IMG/VR virus record: IMGVR_UViG_3300023257_000007
Coordinates: 62,001-126,000 of that record
Strand: one strand, 5' to 3'
Length of the DNA stretch: 64,000 bases
Positions 3,792-18,104 of this stretch are shown one piece after another. Position 1 is the first letter of the stretch. Each line of letters starts with the position of its first letter. The notes below the pieces were generated by a model that was not told the origin of the DNA, made no database searches, and worked only from the letters and a program-made list of their open reading frames with translations. Made by a program: the position numbers and the translations under genes.

Positions 3792-3935
3792 AGTTCTATT
3801 TTAATTTATTTGTATATATAAATTTTTAAAACTCATTCAAGAATCAAAATTTTTCATTTTTTTATTCTGAAAATTTTGATATATTTATATCAAATTACAA
3901 AACAAAAAATATTACATATATAAACTAAATAAACA

Positions 3936-6092
3936 ATGGAAGAAAATACAGAAAATACAAATCAACCAAAATACCCTTGGTTAGCAAAATTTGCAATAAA
4001 TTTAAATGATTATGCATCTAAAGGTAAATTAAAACCAGTAATAGGTAGAGACGAAGAAATTCGTAGAATATTACAAATACTTTCCAGAAAAACTAAAAAT
4101 AATCCAATAGTTATAGGTGAATCAGGTGTTGGAAAAACATCTGTTGTTGAAGCATTAGCCCAAAGAATAGTTGATGGTGATGTACCTGAAAATCTTAAAG
4201 ATAAAGTAATAGCATCTTTAGATTTAGCTACATTAGTTGCTGGTGCAAAATATAAAGGTGAATTCGAAGAAAGAATACAAACCATTGTAAAAGAAATAAT
4301 TGAATCTAATGGTCAAATTATACTTTTTATTGATGAAATTCACACATTAGTTGGTACAGGTGGTGGAAATGGTGCAATGGATGCTGCAGGTATTTTAAAA
4401 CCTATATTATCAAGAGGTGAAATTAGAGCAATTGGTGCAACAACTATTGATGAATATAAAAAATCAATTGAGCAAGATAGAGCATTAGATAGAAGATTTC
4501 AAACAGTTATGATTGATGAGCCTGATAAATTTCAATCAATTTCAATTTTAAGAGGTATTAAAGATAGTTTTGAAAAACATCATGATGTTAGAATAGTAGA
4601 TAGTGCTATTATAAGTGCTGTAGAATTATCAATAAGATATGTATCTGATAGATTTTTACCAGATAAGGCTATTGATTTATTAGATGAAGCTTGTTCTAAA
4701 TTAAGATTAGAAATAAATTCTGTACCAGGTGAAATTGATGAAATATCTAGAAGAATTCAACAATTAGAAATTGAAAGAGAAGGTTTAAGAATGGAAGGAA
4801 ACAATAAAAAAGTTTCAAAAATTACATCTGAAATAGATTCATTAACTGAAAGCTTAAAAACTTTTAATTTACAATGGAACAAAGAAATAGAACTTGTTGA
4901 TAATATTAAAATATTAAAAAAAGATTTAGCTGGATATAATAATGATATCGAAAAATTTAGAAATGAAGCATATTACGAACATGTAGCAAAATTACAATAT
5001 GGTATAATACCAAAAGTAGAACTAGAAATAAAAGAACTAGAAGATAAACTTAAAGAAATACAAAAAGGTGTCCAACTTGTTGATGAAGAAGTTGATGGTG
5101 AAGATATAGCAGAAATTGTAGCAAAATGGACTGGTATACCAGTTTCAAAAATGTTAAAATCTGAAAAAATAAAATTAGTAAATCTTGAAGATGAATTACA
5201 TAAAAGAATTATTGGCCAAAATGAAGCTGTAACAGAATTATCAAACGCAGTAAGAAGAAGTAGATCCGGATTACAAGATACAAAAAAACCAATTGGTTCT
5301 TTTATTTTCTTAGGAACCACCGGAGTTGGTAAAACAGAAACAGCAAAAGCACTAGCTGAATATTTGTTTGATGATGAAAATGCAATGGTAAGAATTGATA
5401 TGAGTGAATATATGGAAAGACATGCCGTAGCTAAATTAATCGGTCCCCCTCCAGGTTATATTGGTTATGAAGAAGGTGGTCAATTAACAGACCAGGTAAG
5501 AAGAAAACCTTATTCAGTAATTTTATTTGATGAAATTGAAAAAGCTCACCCTGATACATTTAATACCTTATTACAAGTATTAGATGATGGTAGATTAACT
5601 GATAATAAAGGTAGAACTGTTGATTTTAAGAACACTATTATTATTATGACTTCTAATATTGGTTCTCATATTATTAGAGAAAATTTTGAAAAATTAACTG
5701 ATGAAAATAGAGAAGAAGTTATTAAAAAAACCAATGATGAAGTAATGGAAGTTTTAAAAAATACTGTAAGACCAGAATTTTTAAATAGAATTGATGAAAT
5801 TGTGACATTTCAACCATTAACAAGAGAAGAAATTAAAAAAATTGTAGTATTACAATTTAACTCAATCAAGAAAAGATTACCAGACGTTGAATTAGAATTA
5901 ACAGAAAAAGCTCTTGATTATTTAACATTAAAATCATATGATCCTCAATTTGGAGCTAGACCAGTTAAGAGAACATTACAAGATACAATTTTAGATGATT
6001 TATCAATGTCAATTTTAAAAGATGAAGTTAAAAAAGATGATGCTATTTTAATTGACTATGATGGTGAGAAAATAACATTTGACAATAAATAG
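3936..6092 (+). CDS. clpB: ClpB AAA+ disaggregase lacking the N-terminal Clp-repeat domain
   Basis: PVIGRDEEIRR, GESGVGKT, FIDEIH, GATT, ALDRRFQ, FLPDKAIDLLDEA, middle coiled-coil, GTTGVGKTE, RIDMSEY, FDEIEKAHP, GRLTD, FGARP. Confidence 0.96.
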   Translation: MEENTENTNQPKYPWLAKFAINLNDYASKGKLKPVIGRDEEIRRILQILSRKTKNNPIVIGESGVGKTSVVEALAQRIVDGDVPENLKDKVIASLDLATLVAGAKYKGEFEERIQTIVKEIIESNGQIILFIDEIHTLVGTGGGNGAMDAAGILKPILSRGEIRAIGATTIDEYKKSIEQDRALDRRFQTVMIDEPDKFQSISILRGIKDSFEKHHDVRIVDSAIISAVELSIRYVSDRFLPDKAIDLLDEACSKLRLEINSVPGEIDEISRRIQQLEIEREGLRMEGNNKKVSKITSEIDSLTESLKTFNLQWNKEIELVDNIKILKKDLAGYNNDIEKFRNEAYYEHVAKLQYGIIPKVELEIKELEDKLKEIQKGVQLVDEEVDGEDIAEIVAKWTGIPVSKMLKSEKIKLVNLEDELHKRIIGQNEAVTELSNAVRRSRSGLQDTKKPIGSFIFLGTTGVGKTETAKALAEYLFDDENAMVRIDMSEYMERHAVAKLIGPPPGYIGYEEGGQLTDQVRRKPYSVILFDEIEKAHPDTFNTLLQVLDDGRLTDNKGRTVDFKNTIIIMTSNIGSHIIRENFEKLTDENREEVIKKTNDEVMEVLKNTVRPEFLNRIDEIVTFQPLTREEIKKIVVLQFNSIKKRLPDVELELTEKALDYLTLKSYDPQFGARPVKRTLQDTILDDLSMSILKDEVKKDDAILIDYDGEKITFDNK

Positions 6093-6803: not shown

Positions 6804-7178
6804 TTGCGTTCAGATCCATTAGGAATAACAGATTTTATCACGAGACCTGAATTTCTATCAAAGTTATCTGAATATTATGATGGTGATATAAATAATATCA
6901 TAACTAAAAATATCTTACAAAGAATCGGTTTTTATAATGCTAGTTTAAACTTCTCAAAAGGCACTTCATATGCTACTACAGGTCCTAATTACTATGATGT
7001 AGAAAAACTCGTTTCTGGTTTTTTGAAACAACCAGATTTTTCTCTAGAAGATTATATTGAAAAATTCATTGATGCTGACGAAGATAGATGGCGAAGTATA
7101 AGGAAAACGTATAAAACAGATAAATTAAAAGAAAAATATAAATACTTTAGCGAAGCTGGTAAACTCGGATTATTTTAA
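6804..7178 (+). CDS. Hypothetical protein with C-terminal EAGKLGLF motif
   Basis: 124-aa ORF with TTG start; C-terminus resembles those of the 22531 and 23226 ORFs. Confidence 0.65.
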   Translation: MRSDPLGITDFITRPEFLSKLSEYYDGDINNIITKNILQRIGFYNASLNFSKGTSYATTGPNYYDVEKLVSGFLKQPDFSLEDYIEKFIDADEDRWRSIRKTYKTDKLKEKYKYFSEAGKLGLF

Positions 7179-7909
7179 GTATTTATATTATCAAGAAGTT
7201 CCTTTAAATATTTTTTCTTATTCGATTTATATTCTTCTTCAATTATTCTAATTAATTTAATATTATTATCTAGACAATATTCATCTAACAATTTATCTAG
7301 ATGAACAACCTTTTCATATTTTTCTGGTGTGCCTAATTTTTCATATAATTCTTTTGATCTATGCCAAATACCATCATATTCAATAAATAATTTCCTGTCA
7401 GAAAAAGTTATATCAACAGATTTACTATCAATTTTATTAAATGTTATTATCCTATGTGATTTAACATTATGTTCACCATATATTTTTTTGAGATACTTTC
7501 TTATTTCACGTTCACCCTTCGAAGAACATCTACTATTATTTGGTCCTCTTAAATTTTGAATACATTTTTCTCTATATTCTAAATCATTATTTAATTTATA
7601 AATAATTGATTTACTTATTTTATCTTTAGTTTCTTTACTATGTTCTCTCGTATTTGCACATGATCGACTACAAAAATATTTTTCTTTAATTGGAAATTTT
7701 TTAGATGGTTCTTTTACATTAAATTTAACACCACAATTATTACATATTACTTCATAATCAGTTACAACTCCTTGCTCATTTATCATTCTTTTGTGTCTGG
7801 CTTTAATAAGATTATCCTTTGAAGGTTTTTTATGTTTCCATCTTATGTGATTGGCTTTAATTTTAGCATTATCAAATTCTTCATCACAATATTCACAAGT
7901 ATATTTCAT
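7175..7909 (-). CDS. Free-standing putative homing endonuclease: C2H2-like and CxxC zinc fingers plus Vsr/DUF559-like PD-(D/E)xK domain
   Basis: CEYC..HIRWKH, CNNCG..YFCSRSC, SSKGEREI, VDITF..LFIEYDGIWH, IKLIRI; own TATATA at 7929-7934. Confidence 0.8.
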   Translation of the reverse strand: MKYTCEYCDEEFDNAKIKANHIRWKHKKPSKDNLIKARHKRMINEQGVVTDYEVICNNCGVKFNVKEPSKKFPIKEKYFCSRSCANTREHSKETKDKISKSIIYKLNNDLEYREKCIQNLRGPNNSRCSSKGEREIRKYLKKIYGEHNVKSHRIITFNKIDSKSVDITFSDRKLFIEYDGIWHRSKELYEKLGTPEKYEKVVHLDKLLDEYCLDNNIKLIRIIEEEYKSNKKKYLKELLDNINT

Positions 7910-7980
7910 TTTTCATATTATTTTTAACTATATATTAAAACTACGAGGTTCAATTCAATACTATTCCAAATACATAAAAC

Positions 7981-8007
7981 AAAAAAGCCACATAATGTGG
8001 CTTTTTT
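7981..8007 (-). terminator. Intrinsic terminator immediately after tmRNA
   Basis: aaaaaagccacat/atgtggctttttt inverted repeat, a few nt from the tmRNA 3' end. Confidence 0.8.
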
Positions 8008-8028
8008 TAGTGGAGCATTCGGGATTCG

Positions 8029-8245
8029 CTTTTTTATCCAAAAATTTCTTAATGGCGTGGACTATATCATCAACCTAATTAGGTTGCCGGGCGCTCTAGG
8101 ATGTATGTCATCTAGTCTCTGAACCTTCCATTTCTAAATTAATAGCTTGGCTGCTGATTGCCGTATCTTTTTTTAAAAGACTTAGGGTTCCAGCAATTCA
8201 CCCAGTTTTTTCATTATATGTTACCATATAAGGGGTCCGAATTTA
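8029..8245 (-). mobile_element. Group I intron (217 nt, no ORF; P7.1 hairpin suggests subgroup IA) inserted in the tmRNA T-loop
   Basis: P AATTGCTGGAA (8188-8198), Q AATCAGCAG (8151-8159), R GTTCAGAGACTA (8113-8124), S GATATAGTCC (8059-8068); P1 GGGUU|..GACCC with U:G at the 5' splice site; P10 AUUCG/CGAAU; P3 CUGGGUG/CGCCCGG; terminal G at 8029. Confidence 0.93.
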
Positions 8246-8404
8246 AACCCGAGTTCACAACAAGTTCCAGTTCGCTTTCTACAGATATATTTTATTTTTT
8301 CACAAACAAACAAAATATTCAATCTTTTTTATTTCAGGAAAATTGAAAAATCCCTATTCTATTTTATTTAAATACGATTAGACGTGTCGTACTTGTTGAT
8401 TTGT

Positions 8405-8491
8405 CTAGGCAACCACTTCCAGAGCAGATTCAACAACTGCTTCTTGTGAAGTTACAATATCAAAGATATCATCGGCTATTTCTATATTGCC
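8405..8491 (-). other. tmRNA tag reading frame (A)GNIEIADDIFDIVTSQEAVVESALEVVA*
   Basis: Resume codon GGC after TTAAAT; 28 codons to TAG; hydrophobic/Ala C-terminus. Confidence 0.8.
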
Positions 8492-8594
8492 ATTTAAAAT
8501 TGTTTATCTCCGTATTTTACTTGAACTGAGATTTGACAAGATCTGCTTACTAACCTTCATCGAGAGTGTCTAAAGCCTGTATGCCCCATATTTT

Positions 8595-13282: not shown

Positions 13283-14206
13283 TCATATTATAAAGAATGA
13301 TTCTAATATTTGTATAACATTTTCATCATAACGTATTCTTATCAAATCGATATTGTTTTCTTTACAATATCGATTTTTTATTTCGTCATTGTTTTGTGTT
13401 TCTTTTAATTTTTTCCAAATTTTATTTTCTCTAAAATGTTGTTCACCATCATATTCAATACACAAATTATGTTTTGGTAAATAAAAATCAAAAGGTAATG
13501 GTAACTTATTTCTACAATCTTTAAATCTAAATTGAATTTCAAAGTCAATATTTCTATCTGATAGATAATTTCTTATTTGTGTTTCACCATGAGACATTCT
13601 ACATATTGGACAACCTTTACCAGATAGGTGGTTGTTCGGTGTTTGATTAAATGTACCATGTTTATCACATATAATTTCAACTTTTGAAATTGCATTTACA
13701 TATTTAACATCACAATAATCATACATATCACCGTGTTTTAATTTTGATTTTTTAATAAATTCTTTCGTATTAGATCTATATGTACCATCACACTTTGGAC
13801 ATCCAGAAACATAATGAGATCTTGGTTCTTGTTCAAAAACACCGTGTTCTGGACACACAATTTTAACCTTGGTTTTATTATTTTCATATTCAACTAAATC
13901 ATAAATATATTTATCACCGTGTTTTAATTTTGATTTTCTAATAAAATCATCGTTTTTAAGAGAAAACAATTCGTTTTTATGTTCTGATGAACATTTTGTA
14001 CAACCACCACCTCTCATATGGACATCTGGTCTTTGTTTAAAAATTCCATGTTTATTGCAAATGATATTAACACATAAACTATTTTTAATATAATTCACTA
14101 AAGAATAATCATATCTAAGTCCATGTTTTTTGATAGATTTTTCAACAAAAATCATAGTATTATACTTTACAGGCATATTTTTAATAATTTTTAAGTAATG
14201 ATTCAA
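13283..14206 (-). CDS. Putative homing endonuclease: three C..HG..H..G.GC..C (DUF723-like) repeats plus Vsr/DUF559-like nuclease
   Basis: Repeated YDY..V.Y....V.I.C..HG.F.Q.P..H..G.GC..C; C-terminal LPFDFYLP..NLCIEYDGEQH, LIRI. Confidence 0.85.
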   Translation of the reverse strand: MNHYLKIIKNMPVKYNTMIFVEKSIKKHGLRYDYSLVNYIKNSLCVNIICNKHGIFKQRPDVHMRGGGCTKCSSEHKNELFSLKNDDFIRKSKLKHGDKYIYDLVEYENNKTKVKIVCPEHGVFEQEPRSHYVSGCPKCDGTYRSNTKEFIKKSKLKHGDMYDYCDVKYVNAISKVEIICDKHGTFNQTPNNHLSGKGCPICRMSHGETQIRNYLSDRNIDFEIQFRFKDCRNKLPLPFDFYLPKHNLCIEYDGEQHFRENKIWKKLKETQNNDEIKNRYCKENNIDLIRIRYDENVIQILESFFII

Positions 14207-17362: not shown

Positions 17363-18055
17363 TTAACACATTTTCAATTTTTTAATTATATCACTAATAG
17401 TGCCTTTTGAAGCACAAAAATATTCAGCAATTTTAACTTGTTTAATATTTTGATTAAAATACATATCATAAACTTTTTCTCTATCAATTTTTGGTTGTTT
17501 ATATTTCAAATTATTAGATTTTTCTATAATTTCATCAAGATTTTCGTAGAAAAATTTTGAATCTGTATGTTTTATTGTGTGACAATTTCTACATATTATT
17601 TTACATTTATCTAATTCATTTTGTACTTTTTCACTCAAATCTTTTATACTATCAAATCTACTAGTTATATCACTTAAAATAAAATCCTTATTTCTTTCAT
17701 GATGAAAATTTAATGACGAATTACATTTATTATATCCACATATATAACATTTATCATCACCTAAATATTTTAAATAAATGTGTTTGTTGTGTCTCTTATT
17801 AGAAACTTTGCCAATTTTTTCATGTAATTCTTGATGACAATTTTGACAATATAATTCACACTTTTTTAACTCTTTCTCTATTATATTCCAGCTATAATTT
17901 CTTAAAACATTTAATGATTCTTTTTTATCATCTATATGATGAAAACACAATTTTAATATATTATCTTCACCACACATTTTACAAGAACCACCAAGTAATT
18001 TAACTGCTTTGTACTTTTTAGCAAAAACTAATATTTTTGTTGATAATTTTTTCAT
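17363..18055 (-). CDS. Double-HNH homing endonuclease-like protein with C-terminal HTH, inserted in the tRNA cluster
   Basis: Two CxxC..L.FHH..C...CxNCH..H units plus QVKIAEYF..SKGTISDII; real start is the ATG at 18055 (the track's 18100 start runs through a palindrome). Confidence 0.85.
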   Translation of the reverse strand: MKKLSTKILVFAKKYKAVKLLGGSCKMCGEDNILKLCFHHIDDKKESLNVLRNYSWNIIEKELKKCELYCQNCHQELHEKIGKVSNKRHNKHIYLKYLGDDKCYICGYNKCNSSLNFHHERNKDFILSDITSRFDSIKDLSEKVQNELDKCKIICRNCHTIKHTDSKFFYENLDEIIEKSNNLKYKQPKIDREKVYDMYFNQNIKQVKIAEYFCASKGTISDIIKKLKMC

Positions 18056-18104
18056 GTTCGAGGTTTTAATTTTATATATTAAAATTAAAACCTCGAACAT
18101 GAAA
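18050..18104 (-). promoter_or_regulatory. Perfect 25-bp hairpin with late promoter TATATA at the apex; stem includes the HNH start codon
   Basis: tttcatgttcgaggttttaatttta / taaaattaaaacctcgaacatgaaa, 5-nt loop tatat. Confidence 0.85.

What the first reader, a model, noticed from the sequence alone, without database searches (positions are those of the whole stretch)
7175..8245. ORF-less intron next to a free-standing endonuclease: possible collaborative homing at tmRNA
Seen: the intron has no internal ORF, yet about 100 nt beyond the tmRNA 3' end, past a terminator and with its own TATATA, lies a Zn-finger/PD-(D/E)xK endonuclease gene. Established: collaborative homing is known in phages, where a free-standing nuclease cuts intron-less alleles and the intron protects the donor (e.g. 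cyanophage psbA intron with F-CphI). Inference: the nuclease may target the intact T-loop DNA (CGGGTTCGAATCCCG) of intron-less tmRNA or tRNA genes in co-infecting phages.
Basis: inference. Interest (0 to 1): 0.65.

Follow-up and report, generated by a model that had tools for sequence, protein, structure and literature searches.

The report
Phage tmRNA intron beside homing-type nuclease
A giant phage carries a tmRNA gene split by a self-splicing intron with no gene of its own, followed by a separate DNA-cutting enzyme gene from a phage family that nearly always sits beside tmRNA genes, so the two probably spread together, though no cutting has been tested.

Summary
On the minus strand lie tmRNA exon 1 (8587-8246), a 217-nt ORF-less group I intron (8245-8029; Rfam 100 bits) in the T loop, exon 2 (8028-8010), a hairpin terminator, and 100 nt further a 244-aa ORF (7909-7175). 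The ORF has Zn-finger modules and a C-terminal Vsr/I-Bth0305I-like nuclease domain (Z 10.5-11.2).

- About 31 distinct full-length relatives of the nuclease, all from phage contigs, lie within about 450 nt of a tmRNA gene.
- Twelve of these tmRNA genes carry a group I intron. The introns occupy three sites, all within the last ~35 nt: T-loop position 3, T-loop position 7, and the acceptor 3' strand.
- In a nuclease-blind sample of about 23 phage tmRNAs, none had an intron.
- The link is loose. Intron-plus and intron-minus loci are sisters three times in the nuclease tree, and introns also occur without this nuclease.
- The central Zn/NUMOD3-like module recurs on EndoVII, GIY-YIG and DUF7487 nucleases that sit in tRNA arrays.

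Most likely this is a free-standing homing endonuclease aimed at the 3' end of ssrA, with the intron protecting the donor. The cleavage site is inferred, not shown.

The parts
8246..8587 (-). tmRNA (ssrA) exon 1. It runs from the 5' acceptor strand GGGGCAU through the pseudoknots and tag frame to the 5' half of the T arm, ending ...UCGGGUU.
   Evidence: nhmmer against a profile of phage tmRNAs gave E 2.4e-39. Rfam RF00023 gave only 8.2 bits because the gene is interrupted. The sequence was read.
8405..8497 (-). Probable tag reading frame, ending ...SALEVVA followed by a stop at 8407-8405. The resume codon was not determined. At about 27-30 codons the tag is unusually long.
   Evidence: Translation. 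The L208/L009 relatives have a comparable long frame ending ...VFVA-stop (alignment A2).
8029..8245 (-). ORF-less group I intron, 217 nt, inserted between T-loop nucleotides 2 and 3 (TT|CGAAT).
   Evidence: RF00028 at 100.2 bits, E 1.6e-26. U(-1) is at 8246 and omega-G at 8029, and the guide sequence pairs with both exons. The MFE fold recovers P1 and P2, z -2.8. No ORF of 40 aa or more lies on its strand.
8010..8028 (-). tmRNA exon 2: the 3' half of the T loop and stem, the acceptor 3' strand AUGCUCC, discriminator A (8011) and one C. The CCA tail is not fully encoded.
   Evidence: Read. It is unique in the window apart from a 3-mismatch match in the tRNA-Ala gene.
7981..8007 (-). Intrinsic-terminator-like hairpin (12 bp, then a T run) between the tmRNA gene and the nuclease gene.
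   Evidence: Similar hairpins follow the tmRNA in L003, L207, L208, L009, L213, L011 and L112.
7175..7909 (-). Free-standing nuclease gene, 244 aa (protein P0092).
   Evidence: ORF. phrog_559 'HNH endonuclease' at 1.6e-11. 91 relatives found. AF2 model with pLDDT 92.
7832..7903 (-). N-terminal C2H2-like zinc finger (residues 3-26).
   Evidence: Weak Pfam zf-C2H2 hits. C5, C8, R23 and W24 are at least 90% conserved in A1. The PDB profile search hit classical zinc fingers at E 0.003-0.1.
7604..7768 (-). Central Zn-ribbon / zf-FCS-like module plus NUMOD3-like helix (residues 48-102). The presumed DNA-recognition module, shared with nucleases that have other catalytic domains.
   Evidence: C56, C59, C80 and C84 are invariant. 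NUMOD3 E 0.016 and zf-FCS E 0.22, both below Pfam cut-offs. 62% identity over 55 residues to the EndoVII protein P0072.
7178..7534 (-). C-terminal Vsr-like (DUF559 / EDxHD-type) nuclease domain (residues 126-244).
   Evidence: VIA-align: Vsr 1cw0 Z 11.2, I-Bth0305I 3r3p Z 10.5, NGO0050 3hrl Z 10.3. E133, D166, E177, D179 and H183 are invariant and D205 is at least 90% conserved. DUF559 E 0.013-0.09, below the Pfam cut-off.

Best explanation
The 244-aa ORF is a free-standing homing-type endonuclease. Zn-finger and NUMOD3-like DNA-binding modules are joined to a Vsr/EDxHD-like catalytic domain. It belongs to a phage-restricted family that lives next to tmRNA (ssrA) genes.

Proposed mechanism (inferred):
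1. During mixed infection the enzyme cuts ssrA alleles of competing phages within the last ~35 bp of the gene (T arm to acceptor 3' strand).
2. Repair from the donor copies the nuclease gene together with the adjacent 3' part of ssrA.
3. The donor is protected because this stretch is interrupted by the self-splicing, ORF-less intron at TT|CGAAT. In other lineages protection comes from an intron at another nearby site, or from a re-coded T arm.
4. The intron costs nothing because it splices out and restores the T loop. It is carried along by co-conversion. This is collaborative (trans) homing.

Shown: the anatomy, the fold, the family-wide linkage to tmRNA genes, and the excess of introns at nuclease-linked tmRNA genes.
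Inferred: nuclease activity, the cleavage site, protection by the intron, and co-conversion.
For: 1. Anatomy is as described.

2. The C-terminal domain has a Vsr / I-Bth0305I fold (Z 10.5-11.2). A full set of invariant acidic and His residues matches the E-D-x-H-D pattern described for I-Bth0305I in PMC3239194.

3. Full-length relatives lie within about 450 nt of a tmRNA gene in about 31 distinct loci, and are absent from that position in only about 3 or 4. The position varies:
- downstream on the same strand;
- convergent (L213, L016);
- divergent (L211);
- upstream (L071, L077);
- beside permuted tmRNAs (L024, L026, L027, L038).
This is the behaviour of an element that inserts near a DNA target, not of an operon partner.

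4. Distribution is patchy. Only 1 of about 24 distinct phage tmRNA genes sampled blind to the nuclease has it. L111 and L112 are close relatives that differ by presence of a downstream nuclease gene.

5. Twelve of 31 nuclease-linked tmRNA genes have a group I intron, against 0 of 23 nuclease-free ones (p 5e-4). Insertion sites are T-loop position 3 (9 lineages), T-loop position 7 (L025, probably L043) and the acceptor 3' strand (L005). All lie in the last ~35 nt.

6. L208 (intron) and L009 (no intron) have sister nucleases and tmRNAs about 80% identical. In L009 the 5-bp T stem is wholly re-coded with compensating changes, and the T loop starts CU instead of UU (alignment A2).

7. The central module (residues 48-102) is 62% identical to that of an EndoVII protein, and is also found on GIY-YIG and DUF7487 proteins. 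All three sit inside tRNA arrays. The module therefore tracks tRNA-like genes whatever the catalytic domain.

8. The family is phage-only. Among 185,579 prokaryote species genomes there were 4 hits, all MAG contigs; one (L336) is the same 425,361-bp contig as the viral record of L012, and I take the other three for phage DNA as well.
Against: - No cleavage, binding or splicing has been measured.
- The majority of nuclease-linked tmRNA genes (19 of 31) are intron-less, and several have a perfectly ordinary T arm (L010, L017, L028, L035, L039, L071, L076, L077). Either the target differs between lineages or protection lies elsewhere.
- The excess of unusual T arms among intron-less nuclease-linked genes is not significant (6 of 14 against 3 of 23, p 0.057).
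- Introns at T-loop position 3 occur without this nuclease (L111, L117/L215).
- Intron state changes between sister nucleases three times.
- The two samples compared in the Fisher test come from different lineages and are not corrected for phylogeny.
- The window's copy lacks the last ~10 residues conserved in the family, including a Tyr present in at least 90% of members. It may be decaying.
- The phage's own tRNA genes resemble the spliced T arm.
Confidence: 0.5

Rival explanations
1. The two are neighbours only. The ORF is a free-standing homing endonuclease, but its target is the intergenic insertion point just 3' of ssrA or some other nearby sequence. The intron is an unrelated passenger that entered the T loop by reverse splicing or an older homing event and is now inherited vertically.
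For: - 19 of 31 nuclease-linked tmRNA genes have no intron, and many have ordinary T arms.
- Intron state flips between sister nucleases.
- Introns at the same T-loop site exist without the nuclease (L111, L215).
- T-loop introns are known in 883 bacterial tmRNA sequences, of which 96% lack any HEG (PMC11915505).
Against: - Introns are enriched at nuclease-linked genes: 12 of 31 against 0 of 23.
- Three separate insertion sites all cluster in the last ~35 nt, including one site not reported for bacteria.
- The T stem is re-coded in L009.
- The DNA-binding module follows tRNA-like genes.
Confidence: 0.28
2. The protein acts on RNA rather than DNA. It would be a Vsr-fold (RAP-like) tmRNA-binding or tmRNA-processing factor that serves the phage's own tmRNA, for example in 3'-end maturation.
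For: - RAP / FASTKD-type Vsr-fold RNA-binding domains are among the best structural matches (9g6k_LJ Z 10.0, FASTKD4 9gek Z 9.2).
- Linkage to tmRNA genes is tight, whether or not an intron is present.
Against: - Only about 1 in 24 phage tmRNA genes sampled blind has it, so tmRNA does not need it.
- Orientation relative to the tmRNA gene varies (convergent, divergent, upstream), which argues against co-expression.
- The central module is shared with EndoVII and GIY-YIG proteins in tRNA arrays, a domain mix typical of homing endonucleases.
- The putative catalytic residues are invariant.
Confidence: 0.1
3. The nuclease is aimed at the host. It would cut the host chromosome's ssrA gene, or host tRNA genes, so that the phage's intron-protected or re-coded tmRNA takes over ribosome rescue.
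For: Only indirect evidence:
- The phage brings its own tmRNA and tRNAs.
- The intron site (T-loop position 3) is the one reported only from Bacteroidia tmRNAs, which hints at sequence kinship between phage and host ssrA.
Against: - Nothing links the enzyme to host DNA.
- The patchy presence among close relatives (L111 against L112) and the movement of the gene around ssrA are typical of selfish homing elements.
- Cutting the host chromosome does not need such specificity.
Confidence: 0.05

Closest known systems
Collaborative (trans) homing: F-CphI with the psbA intron of cyanophage S-PM2, and T4 mobE with the defunct I-TevIII intron (PMC6083498, PMC3984707, PMC2790892)
   Same: An ORF-less or HEG-defective self-splicing group I intron sits in a conserved phage gene, with a free-standing endonuclease gene in the neighbouring DNA. 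In both cases the proposed logic is that the nuclease cuts intron-less alleles and the intron shields the donor.
   Different: - The host gene here is a structural RNA (tmRNA), not a protein gene.
- The catalytic domain is Vsr/EDxHD-like, not EndoVII or HNH.
- The nuclease family is found next to its presumed target gene far more often without an intron than with one.
- Cleavage has not been tested.
I-Bth0305I and the EDxHD (Vsr-like) homing endonuclease family (PMC3239194; PDB 3R3P)
   Same: It is a phage protein with a C-terminal Vsr-fold nuclease domain (Z 10.5, rmsd 2.9 A, 94 of 98 residues aligned). It has conserved Glu, Asp, His and Asp residues and a modular N-terminal DNA-binding region.
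   Different: - I-Bth0305I is encoded inside its intron (in recA) and uses NUMOD2/HTH-type modules. This protein is free-standing and uses Zn fingers plus a NUMOD3-like helix.
- No sequence-level match was found: the PDB profile search found no nuclease, and DUF559 stays below the Pfam cut-off.
Intron-form tmRNA genes (PMC11915505; bioRxiv 10.1101/2020.01.27.920355)
   Same: A group I intron lies in the T loop with U(-1) and omega-G, and splicing restores the T loop. The subsite (position 3, TT|CGAAT) is one of the four described.
   Different: - Position 3 was reported only from Bacteroidia chromosomes. Here it is in huge-phage tmRNA genes.
- The few HEGs described there (4.1%) are LAGLIDADG genes inside the intron. 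Here the nuclease is outside the intron and of another family.
- A relative (L005) has the intron in the acceptor 3' strand, outside the T loop.
Free-standing HEGs in phage tRNA gene clusters, such as T4 SegB (from my own knowledge; T4 mobile elements are reviewed in PMC2988022)
   Same: A free-standing endonuclease gene is lodged among tRNA-like genes and is thought to favour inheritance of that region in mixed infections. Module-sharing relatives of the present protein sit in tRNA arrays.
   Different: SegB is a GIY-YIG enzyme. No link to tmRNA or to an intron has been described for it.

Membership tests
Group I intron (Rfam RF00028) | Conserved catalytic core (P3-P9) scoring above the family's gathering score | tested here: met
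   100.2 bits against a cut-off of 50, E 1.6e-26, with the full model 1-253 matched.
Group I intron (Rfam RF00028) | U at -1 paired to G in P1, G at the 3' end, and a guide sequence pairing with both exons | tested here: met
   Read. Exon 1 ends GGGUU, the intron starts UAAAUUCGGACCC, and it ends ...AAAAAG. ATTCG pairs with exon 2 (CGAAU) and GACCC with exon 1 (GGGU.U). P1 is recovered in the MFE fold.
Group I intron (Rfam RF00028) | Self-splicing activity | not testable with these tools
An in-vitro splicing assay is needed.
tmRNA, intron form | tRNA-Ala-like acceptor stem with G3.U70, and a T arm restored by splicing | tested here: met
   GGGGCAU pairs with AUGCUCC including G3.U70, followed by discriminator A. 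The two exon ends give TCGGG-TTCGAAT-CCCGA. The exons were examined separately; they were never joined or searched as one sequence.
tmRNA, intron form | Homology of the body (pseudoknots, tag frame) to recognised tmRNAs | tested here: met
   Exon 1 scores E 2.4e-39 against a profile of phage tmRNAs whose intact members reach 82-116 bits on RF00023. The window's own exon 1 reaches only 8.2 bits on RF00023. A tag-like frame ends ...ALEVVA-stop.
EDxHD / Vsr-like homing endonucleases (I-Bth0305I) | Vsr-type nuclease fold in the C-terminal domain | tested here: met
   AF2 model with pLDDT 92. 1cw0 Z 11.2 (125 residues aligned), 3r3p Z 10.5 (94 of 98), 3hrl Z 10.3. Foldseek alone was weak: E 0.12, TM 0.55 by target.
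EDxHD / Vsr-like homing endonucleases (I-Bth0305I) | Conserved composite catalytic motif Glu...Asp...(acidic)...His...Asp | tested here: inconclusive
   E133, D166, E177, D179 and H183 are invariant and D205 is at least 90% conserved in 34 sequences. They come in the order given for I-Bth0305I (E170, D196, H213, D222). I did not obtain a residue-by-residue superposition, so the equivalences are inferred.
EDxHD / Vsr-like homing endonucleases (I-Bth0305I) | Detectable sequence membership (DUF559 / Vsr profile) | tested here: not met
   Pfam DUF559 gave E 0.013-0.09 at 13-16 bits, against a cut-off of 20.6. The PDB profile search found no nuclease. For this reason I file it as Vsr-fold and EDxHD-like, not as a proven member.
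EDxHD / Vsr-like homing endonucleases (I-Bth0305I) | Site-specific double-strand cleavage of the HEG-less or intron-less allele | not testable with these tools
   Needs an enzyme assay.
Collaborative homing pair | An ORF-less intron and a free-standing nuclease gene adjacent in the donor genome | tested here: met
   The same arrangement is found in L001, L003, L207, L208, L209, L210, L213, L011, L043, L025 and L005.
Collaborative homing pair | Non-independent distribution of intron and nuclease among related genomes | tested here: inconclusive
   There is enrichment: 12 of 31 against 0 of 23, p 5e-4. But each element occurs without the other, intron state flips between sister nucleases, and the samples are not phylogenetically matched.
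Collaborative homing pair | [quoted passage not shown] | not testable with these tools
   Only circumstantial evidence exists: three intron sites within ~35 nt, T-stem re-coding in L009, and the module shared with tRNA-array nucleases.

The most novel reading that the evidence does not exclude
This is a dedicated lineage of ssrA-targeting free-standing homing endonucleases in huge and other phages. Its central Zn-ribbon/NUMOD3 module would be a reader of tRNA-like T-arm/acceptor DNA that has been re-used on at least four catalytic domains (Vsr-like, EndoVII, GIY-YIG, DUF7487). Pressure from these enzymes would have driven repeated, independent protection of the tmRNA 3' end: group I introns at three sites, one of them outside the T loop, and compensatory re-coding of the T stem. 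That would give a mechanism for the spread of ORF-less tmRNA introns, of which 96% lack an internal HEG.
Probability: 0.35. Interest if true: 0.75.

Novelty: new variant of a known kind. Interest (0 to 1): 0.62.

Why it matters
T-loop introns are known in hundreds of tmRNA genes, yet almost none carries a homing endonuclease gene, so how they move is open (PMC11915505). A free-standing nuclease family that lives beside phage tmRNA genes, and at which introns are over-represented, offers a testable route by trans homing. It would be the first such case for a structural RNA gene. The family also supplies natural material for study. There are intron-plus, intron-minus and re-coded alleles next to sister nucleases, which can show how targets escape homing enzymes. 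And one small Zn/NUMOD3 module is combined with four nuclease domains, which is of interest to people who engineer site-specific nucleases. I found no description of this linkage in the searchable literature.

Tried and rejected
- ARAGORN and Rfam at gathering score do not call the tmRNA. It was recovered with Rfam at relaxed threshold, by hand, and with nhmmer profiles of the exons.
- Rfam on large batches missed introns that nhmmer found (L005, L207, L208, L025). Rfam negatives were therefore not trusted.
- Foldseek against PDB gave no significant match for the whole model. The VIA-align wide search did.
- Sequence searches of PDB found only weak zinc-finger matches.
- A single-protein search with the upstream 130-aa gene found only the near-identical sister record. 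Allele comparison by synteny was therefore not possible.
No read evidence for splicing or expression was obtained, and read laying was not used.
- A GGTTCAATT motif seen in several tmRNA-nuclease spacers is not enriched in the window and was dropped.
- The CTCCAC repeats in those spacers are better read as anti-Shine-Dalgarno hairpins than as duplicated tmRNA ends.
- Enrichment of non-canonical T arms at intron-less nuclease-linked genes is only a trend (p 0.057).
- The idea that the ORF lies inside a longer intron was rejected for the window. Exon 2 lies upstream of the ORF and has no second copy.
- The spliced tmRNA was deliberately not assembled or searched as a joined sequence.
- The big representative-protein search, the second structure prediction and the complex prediction were not used. 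The family scans left nothing open that they would decide.
Full report
**Where the window lies.** The window is bases 147476-211475 of a 344.6-kb IMG/VR virus record, which CheckV rates at about 48% complete. A near-identical 348-kb record exists (L008). The closest named relative of the locus is the 735-kb uncultured phage LR756501. The region is AT-rich and carries a ClpB-like gene and seven tRNA genes. This is a huge phage.

**Anatomy (all on the minus strand).**
- tmRNA exon 1 is 8587-8246. It starts GGGGCAU and ends with the 5' half of the T arm, ...UCGGGUU.
- The group I intron is 8245-8029, 217 nt. Rfam RF00028 gives 100.2 bits, E 1.6e-26, and it is the only such intron in the record.
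- The base before the intron is U. The intron ends in G. Its 5' part reads ATTCG|GACCC, which pairs with exon 2 (CGAAU) and exon 1 (GGGU.U). P1 and P10 therefore both point to the same junction (fold).
- Exon 2 is 8028-8010. It supplies the rest of the T loop and stem, the acceptor strand AUGCUCC (which pairs with the 5' end, including G3.U70), discriminator A and one C.
- The intron thus sits between T-loop nucleotides 2 and 3.
- A tag-like frame ends ...SALEVVA-stop at 8405.
- I examined the two exons separately by reference.
- ARAGORN and Rfam at gathering score miss the gene. However, exon 1 matches a profile of phage tmRNAs at E 2.4e-39, and the intact members of that profile score 82-116 bits on RF00023.
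- No ORF of 40 aa or more lies on the intron's strand.
- A 12-bp hairpin with a T run follows at 8007-7981.
- The 244-aa ORF starts at 7909, 100 nt beyond the tmRNA end.

**The protein.**
- PHROGs places it in phrog_559, annotated 'HNH endonuclease' (1.6e-11). Pfam gives only sub-threshold hits to zf-C2H2, zf-FCS, NUMOD3 and DUF559.
- An alignment of 34 relatives (A1) has four invariant Cys (56, 59, 80, 84). It also has invariant S130, E133, D166, E177, Y178, D179, G180, H183 and R221, with D205 at 90% or more.
- The AlphaFold model is confident (pLDDT 92).
- Residues 126-244 match Vsr (1cw0, Z 11.2), the catalytic domain of the homing endonuclease I-Bth0305I (3r3p, Z 10.5, 94 of 98 residues) and the DUF559 protein NGO0050 (Z 10.3).
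- The order of conserved Glu, Asp, His and Asp fits the EDxHD description in PMC3239194. I did not get a residue-level superposition.
- Residues 48-102 (Zn ribbon, the FCSRSC motif and a NUMOD3-like helix) are 62% identical to the N-terminus of an EndoVII-domain protein (P0072). They recur on GIY-YIG and DUF7487 proteins. This mix-and-match of DNA-binding module and catalytic domain is typical of phage homing endonucleases.
- The window's copy ends about 10 residues before the family's conserved C-terminus.

**Comparative test.** I collected relatives of the nuclease from the protein database, from viral contigs and from assemblies. I then looked for tmRNAs and introns around them with Rfam, nhmmer and whole-record searches.

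Of about 34 distinct loci with a full-length relative, about 31 have a tmRNA gene within about 450 nt.
- Usually the nuclease gene follows the tmRNA on the same strand.
- It can also be convergent (L213, L016), divergent (L211) or upstream (L071, L077).
- In L024, L026, L027 and L038 it lies beside a permuted tmRNA.
- The exceptions sit in tRNA arrays (L019, L040) or have no tmRNA found (L022), or only a weak nhmmer match beside the nuclease gene (L013-L015).
- Since a phage genome has one tmRNA gene in 50-700 kb, this linkage cannot be chance.
- The family is essentially phage-only. A scan of 185,579 prokaryote species genomes gave four hits, all MAG contigs; one (L336) is the same 425,361-bp contig as the viral record of L012, and I take the other three for phage DNA as well.

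**Introns.** Twelve of the 31 nuclease-linked tmRNA genes are interrupted by a group I intron.
- Nine have it at the same T-loop position 3 as the window: the window itself, L001, L209, L003, L207, L208, L210, L213 and L011.
- L025, and probably L043, have it at T-loop position 7.
- L005-L007 have it in the acceptor 3' strand, three or four bases before the end of the gene.

According to the 2025 tmRNA database paper (PMC11915505), bacterial tmRNA introns are all in the T loop, at four subsites. Position 3 is seen only in Bacteroidia, and only 4.1% of the introns contain a (LAGLIDADG) endonuclease gene. The authors note that other sites may have been missed.

In a sample of phage tmRNA genes drawn with a 5'-end pattern, blind to nuclease and intron, about 24 distinct genes had no intron and one had the nuclease. 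The contrast of 12 of 31 against 0 of 23 gives p 5e-4. The two samples are from different lineages and are not corrected for phylogeny.

**Limits of the link.**
- In the nuclease tree, intron-plus and intron-minus loci are sisters three times with full support: L208/L009, L210/L211 and L025/L035.
- A scan with an intron-core pattern, blind to the nuclease, found three further tmRNA-borne introns at position 3.
 - L112 has a different downstream ORF. It has HNH-like motifs and a related CxxC...YCSRSC module, scoring E 7e-4 pairwise.
 - L111, its close relative, has none.
 - L117/L215 has none of this family.
- Each element therefore occurs without the other. The nuclease is the steadier companion of the tmRNA gene.

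**Where might it cut?** Four indirect lines of evidence point to the T arm-acceptor stretch.
1. All three intron sites lie within the last ~35 nt of the gene.
2. L009, the intron-less sister of L208, has tmRNA about 80% identical. Its five T-stem pairs are entirely re-coded with compensating changes, and its T loop starts with C (alignment A2).
3. The 48-102 module occurs on other nucleases that sit in tRNA arrays. The T arm and acceptor end are what tRNA and tmRNA genes share.
4. The nuclease gene changes side and strand around ssrA (L210 against L211), as expected for an element that re-inserts near a DNA target.

Against this:
- Several intron-less nuclease-linked tmRNAs have ordinary T arms.
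- The excess of odd T arms is not significant (p 0.057).
- The phage's own tRNA genes match the spliced T-arm 13-mer within 1-2 mismatches.

**Verdict.**
- The best reading is that the ORF is a free-standing, Vsr-fold homing-type endonuclease of a phage family specialised on the ssrA locus. I hold this at about 0.75.
- That the ORF-less intron protects the donor allele and is co-converted with the nuclease gene (collaborative homing) I hold at about 0.5.
- The main rival is that the two are independent neighbours, at about 0.28.
- An RNA-level role is suggested by RAP-domain structural matches. It is unlikely given the patchy distribution, the variable orientation and the domain swapping.

**Novelty.** The components are known: T-loop tmRNA introns, EDxHD-type enzymes and collaborative homing. 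I did not find the following in the searchable literature:
- the tmRNA-linked free-standing nuclease family;
- its association with introns at several sites, including an acceptor-strand site;
- the shared tRNA-locus module.

I rate this a new variant of a known kind.

**Not obtained.** There are no biochemical data.

Noticed in passing
window 13283-14206 (-): A second protein with a Vsr-like nuclease domain: 307-308 aa, with a DUF4379 treble-clef Zn finger and DUF5889. The whole 344-kb record has four matches to the nuclease profile.
   Followed up: partly
window 17363-18100 (-): A 245-aa ORF is wedged between tRNA-Arg and tRNA-Gly in the tRNA cluster. It has repeated CxxC...H motifs that look HNH-like but no Pfam family. 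It may be another free-standing nuclease in a tRNA array.
   Followed up: partly
L005 3745-3968 (also L006, L007): A group I intron is inserted in the acceptor 3' strand of a phage tmRNA (CGACU|intron|CCAC), with the nuclease gene about 35 nt further on. This site lies outside the T loop, where all published tmRNA introns are (PMC11915505).
   Followed up: partly
L001 about 3814-3830 and L209 about 2400-2415: The position-3 introns of LR756501 and a relative appear to end ...UUUCA directly before exon 2 (CGAAU). There is no obvious terminal G. Either the 3' splice site is unusual or the T loop is enlarged after splicing.
   Followed up: no
L067 1892-2120: A group I intron (96 bits) lies in the anticodon loop of a phage tRNA gene within a tRNA array. 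It is about 400 nt upstream of a partial relative of the nuclease.
   Followed up: no
L024, L026, L027, L038 (just 3' of the nuclease gene); L021 3242-3352: Phage contigs carry permuted (two-piece) tmRNA genes immediately after the nuclease gene. One contig has a 111-nt mini tmRNA-like gene (50.8 bits) convergent with it.
   Followed up: partly
L005 about 3985-4030; L010, L035, L025 spacers between tmRNA and nuclease start: Hairpins pair a CTCCAC box with the GGAG Shine-Dalgarno of the nuclease gene. This looks like translational masking, as known for some phage homing endonuclease genes. The window's own copy has a terminator instead and no evident SD.
   Followed up: no
L340, L342, L343/L344: EndoVII, GIY-YIG and DUF7487 proteins that share the 48-102 Zn/NUMOD3-like module all sit inside dense tRNA arrays. 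In L340 the tRNA abuts the stop codon.
   Followed up: yes
window 7175-7210 (3' end of the nuclease ORF): The window's nuclease stops about 10 residues short of the family's conserved C-terminus, where a Tyr is present in at least 90% of members. Its end overlaps the stop of the convergent ORF 6804-7178.
   Followed up: partly
window 8405-8497 (-): The putative tmRNA tag frame is unusually long, at about 27-30 codons, and ends in VVA rather than the usual LAA. Relatives L208 and L009 have similarly long frames ending FVA.
   Followed up: no
L336 (= L012 contig, 425,361 bp): A 425-kb huge-phage contig carrying tmRNA, intron and nuclease is filed in the species-genome set as a Candidatus Pacearchaeota MAG. 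This is probably a binning artefact.
   Followed up: no
window 3936-6092 (+): A 718-aa ClpB/ClpA-type AAA+ chaperone gene lies about 1 kb upstream of the locus.
   Followed up: no
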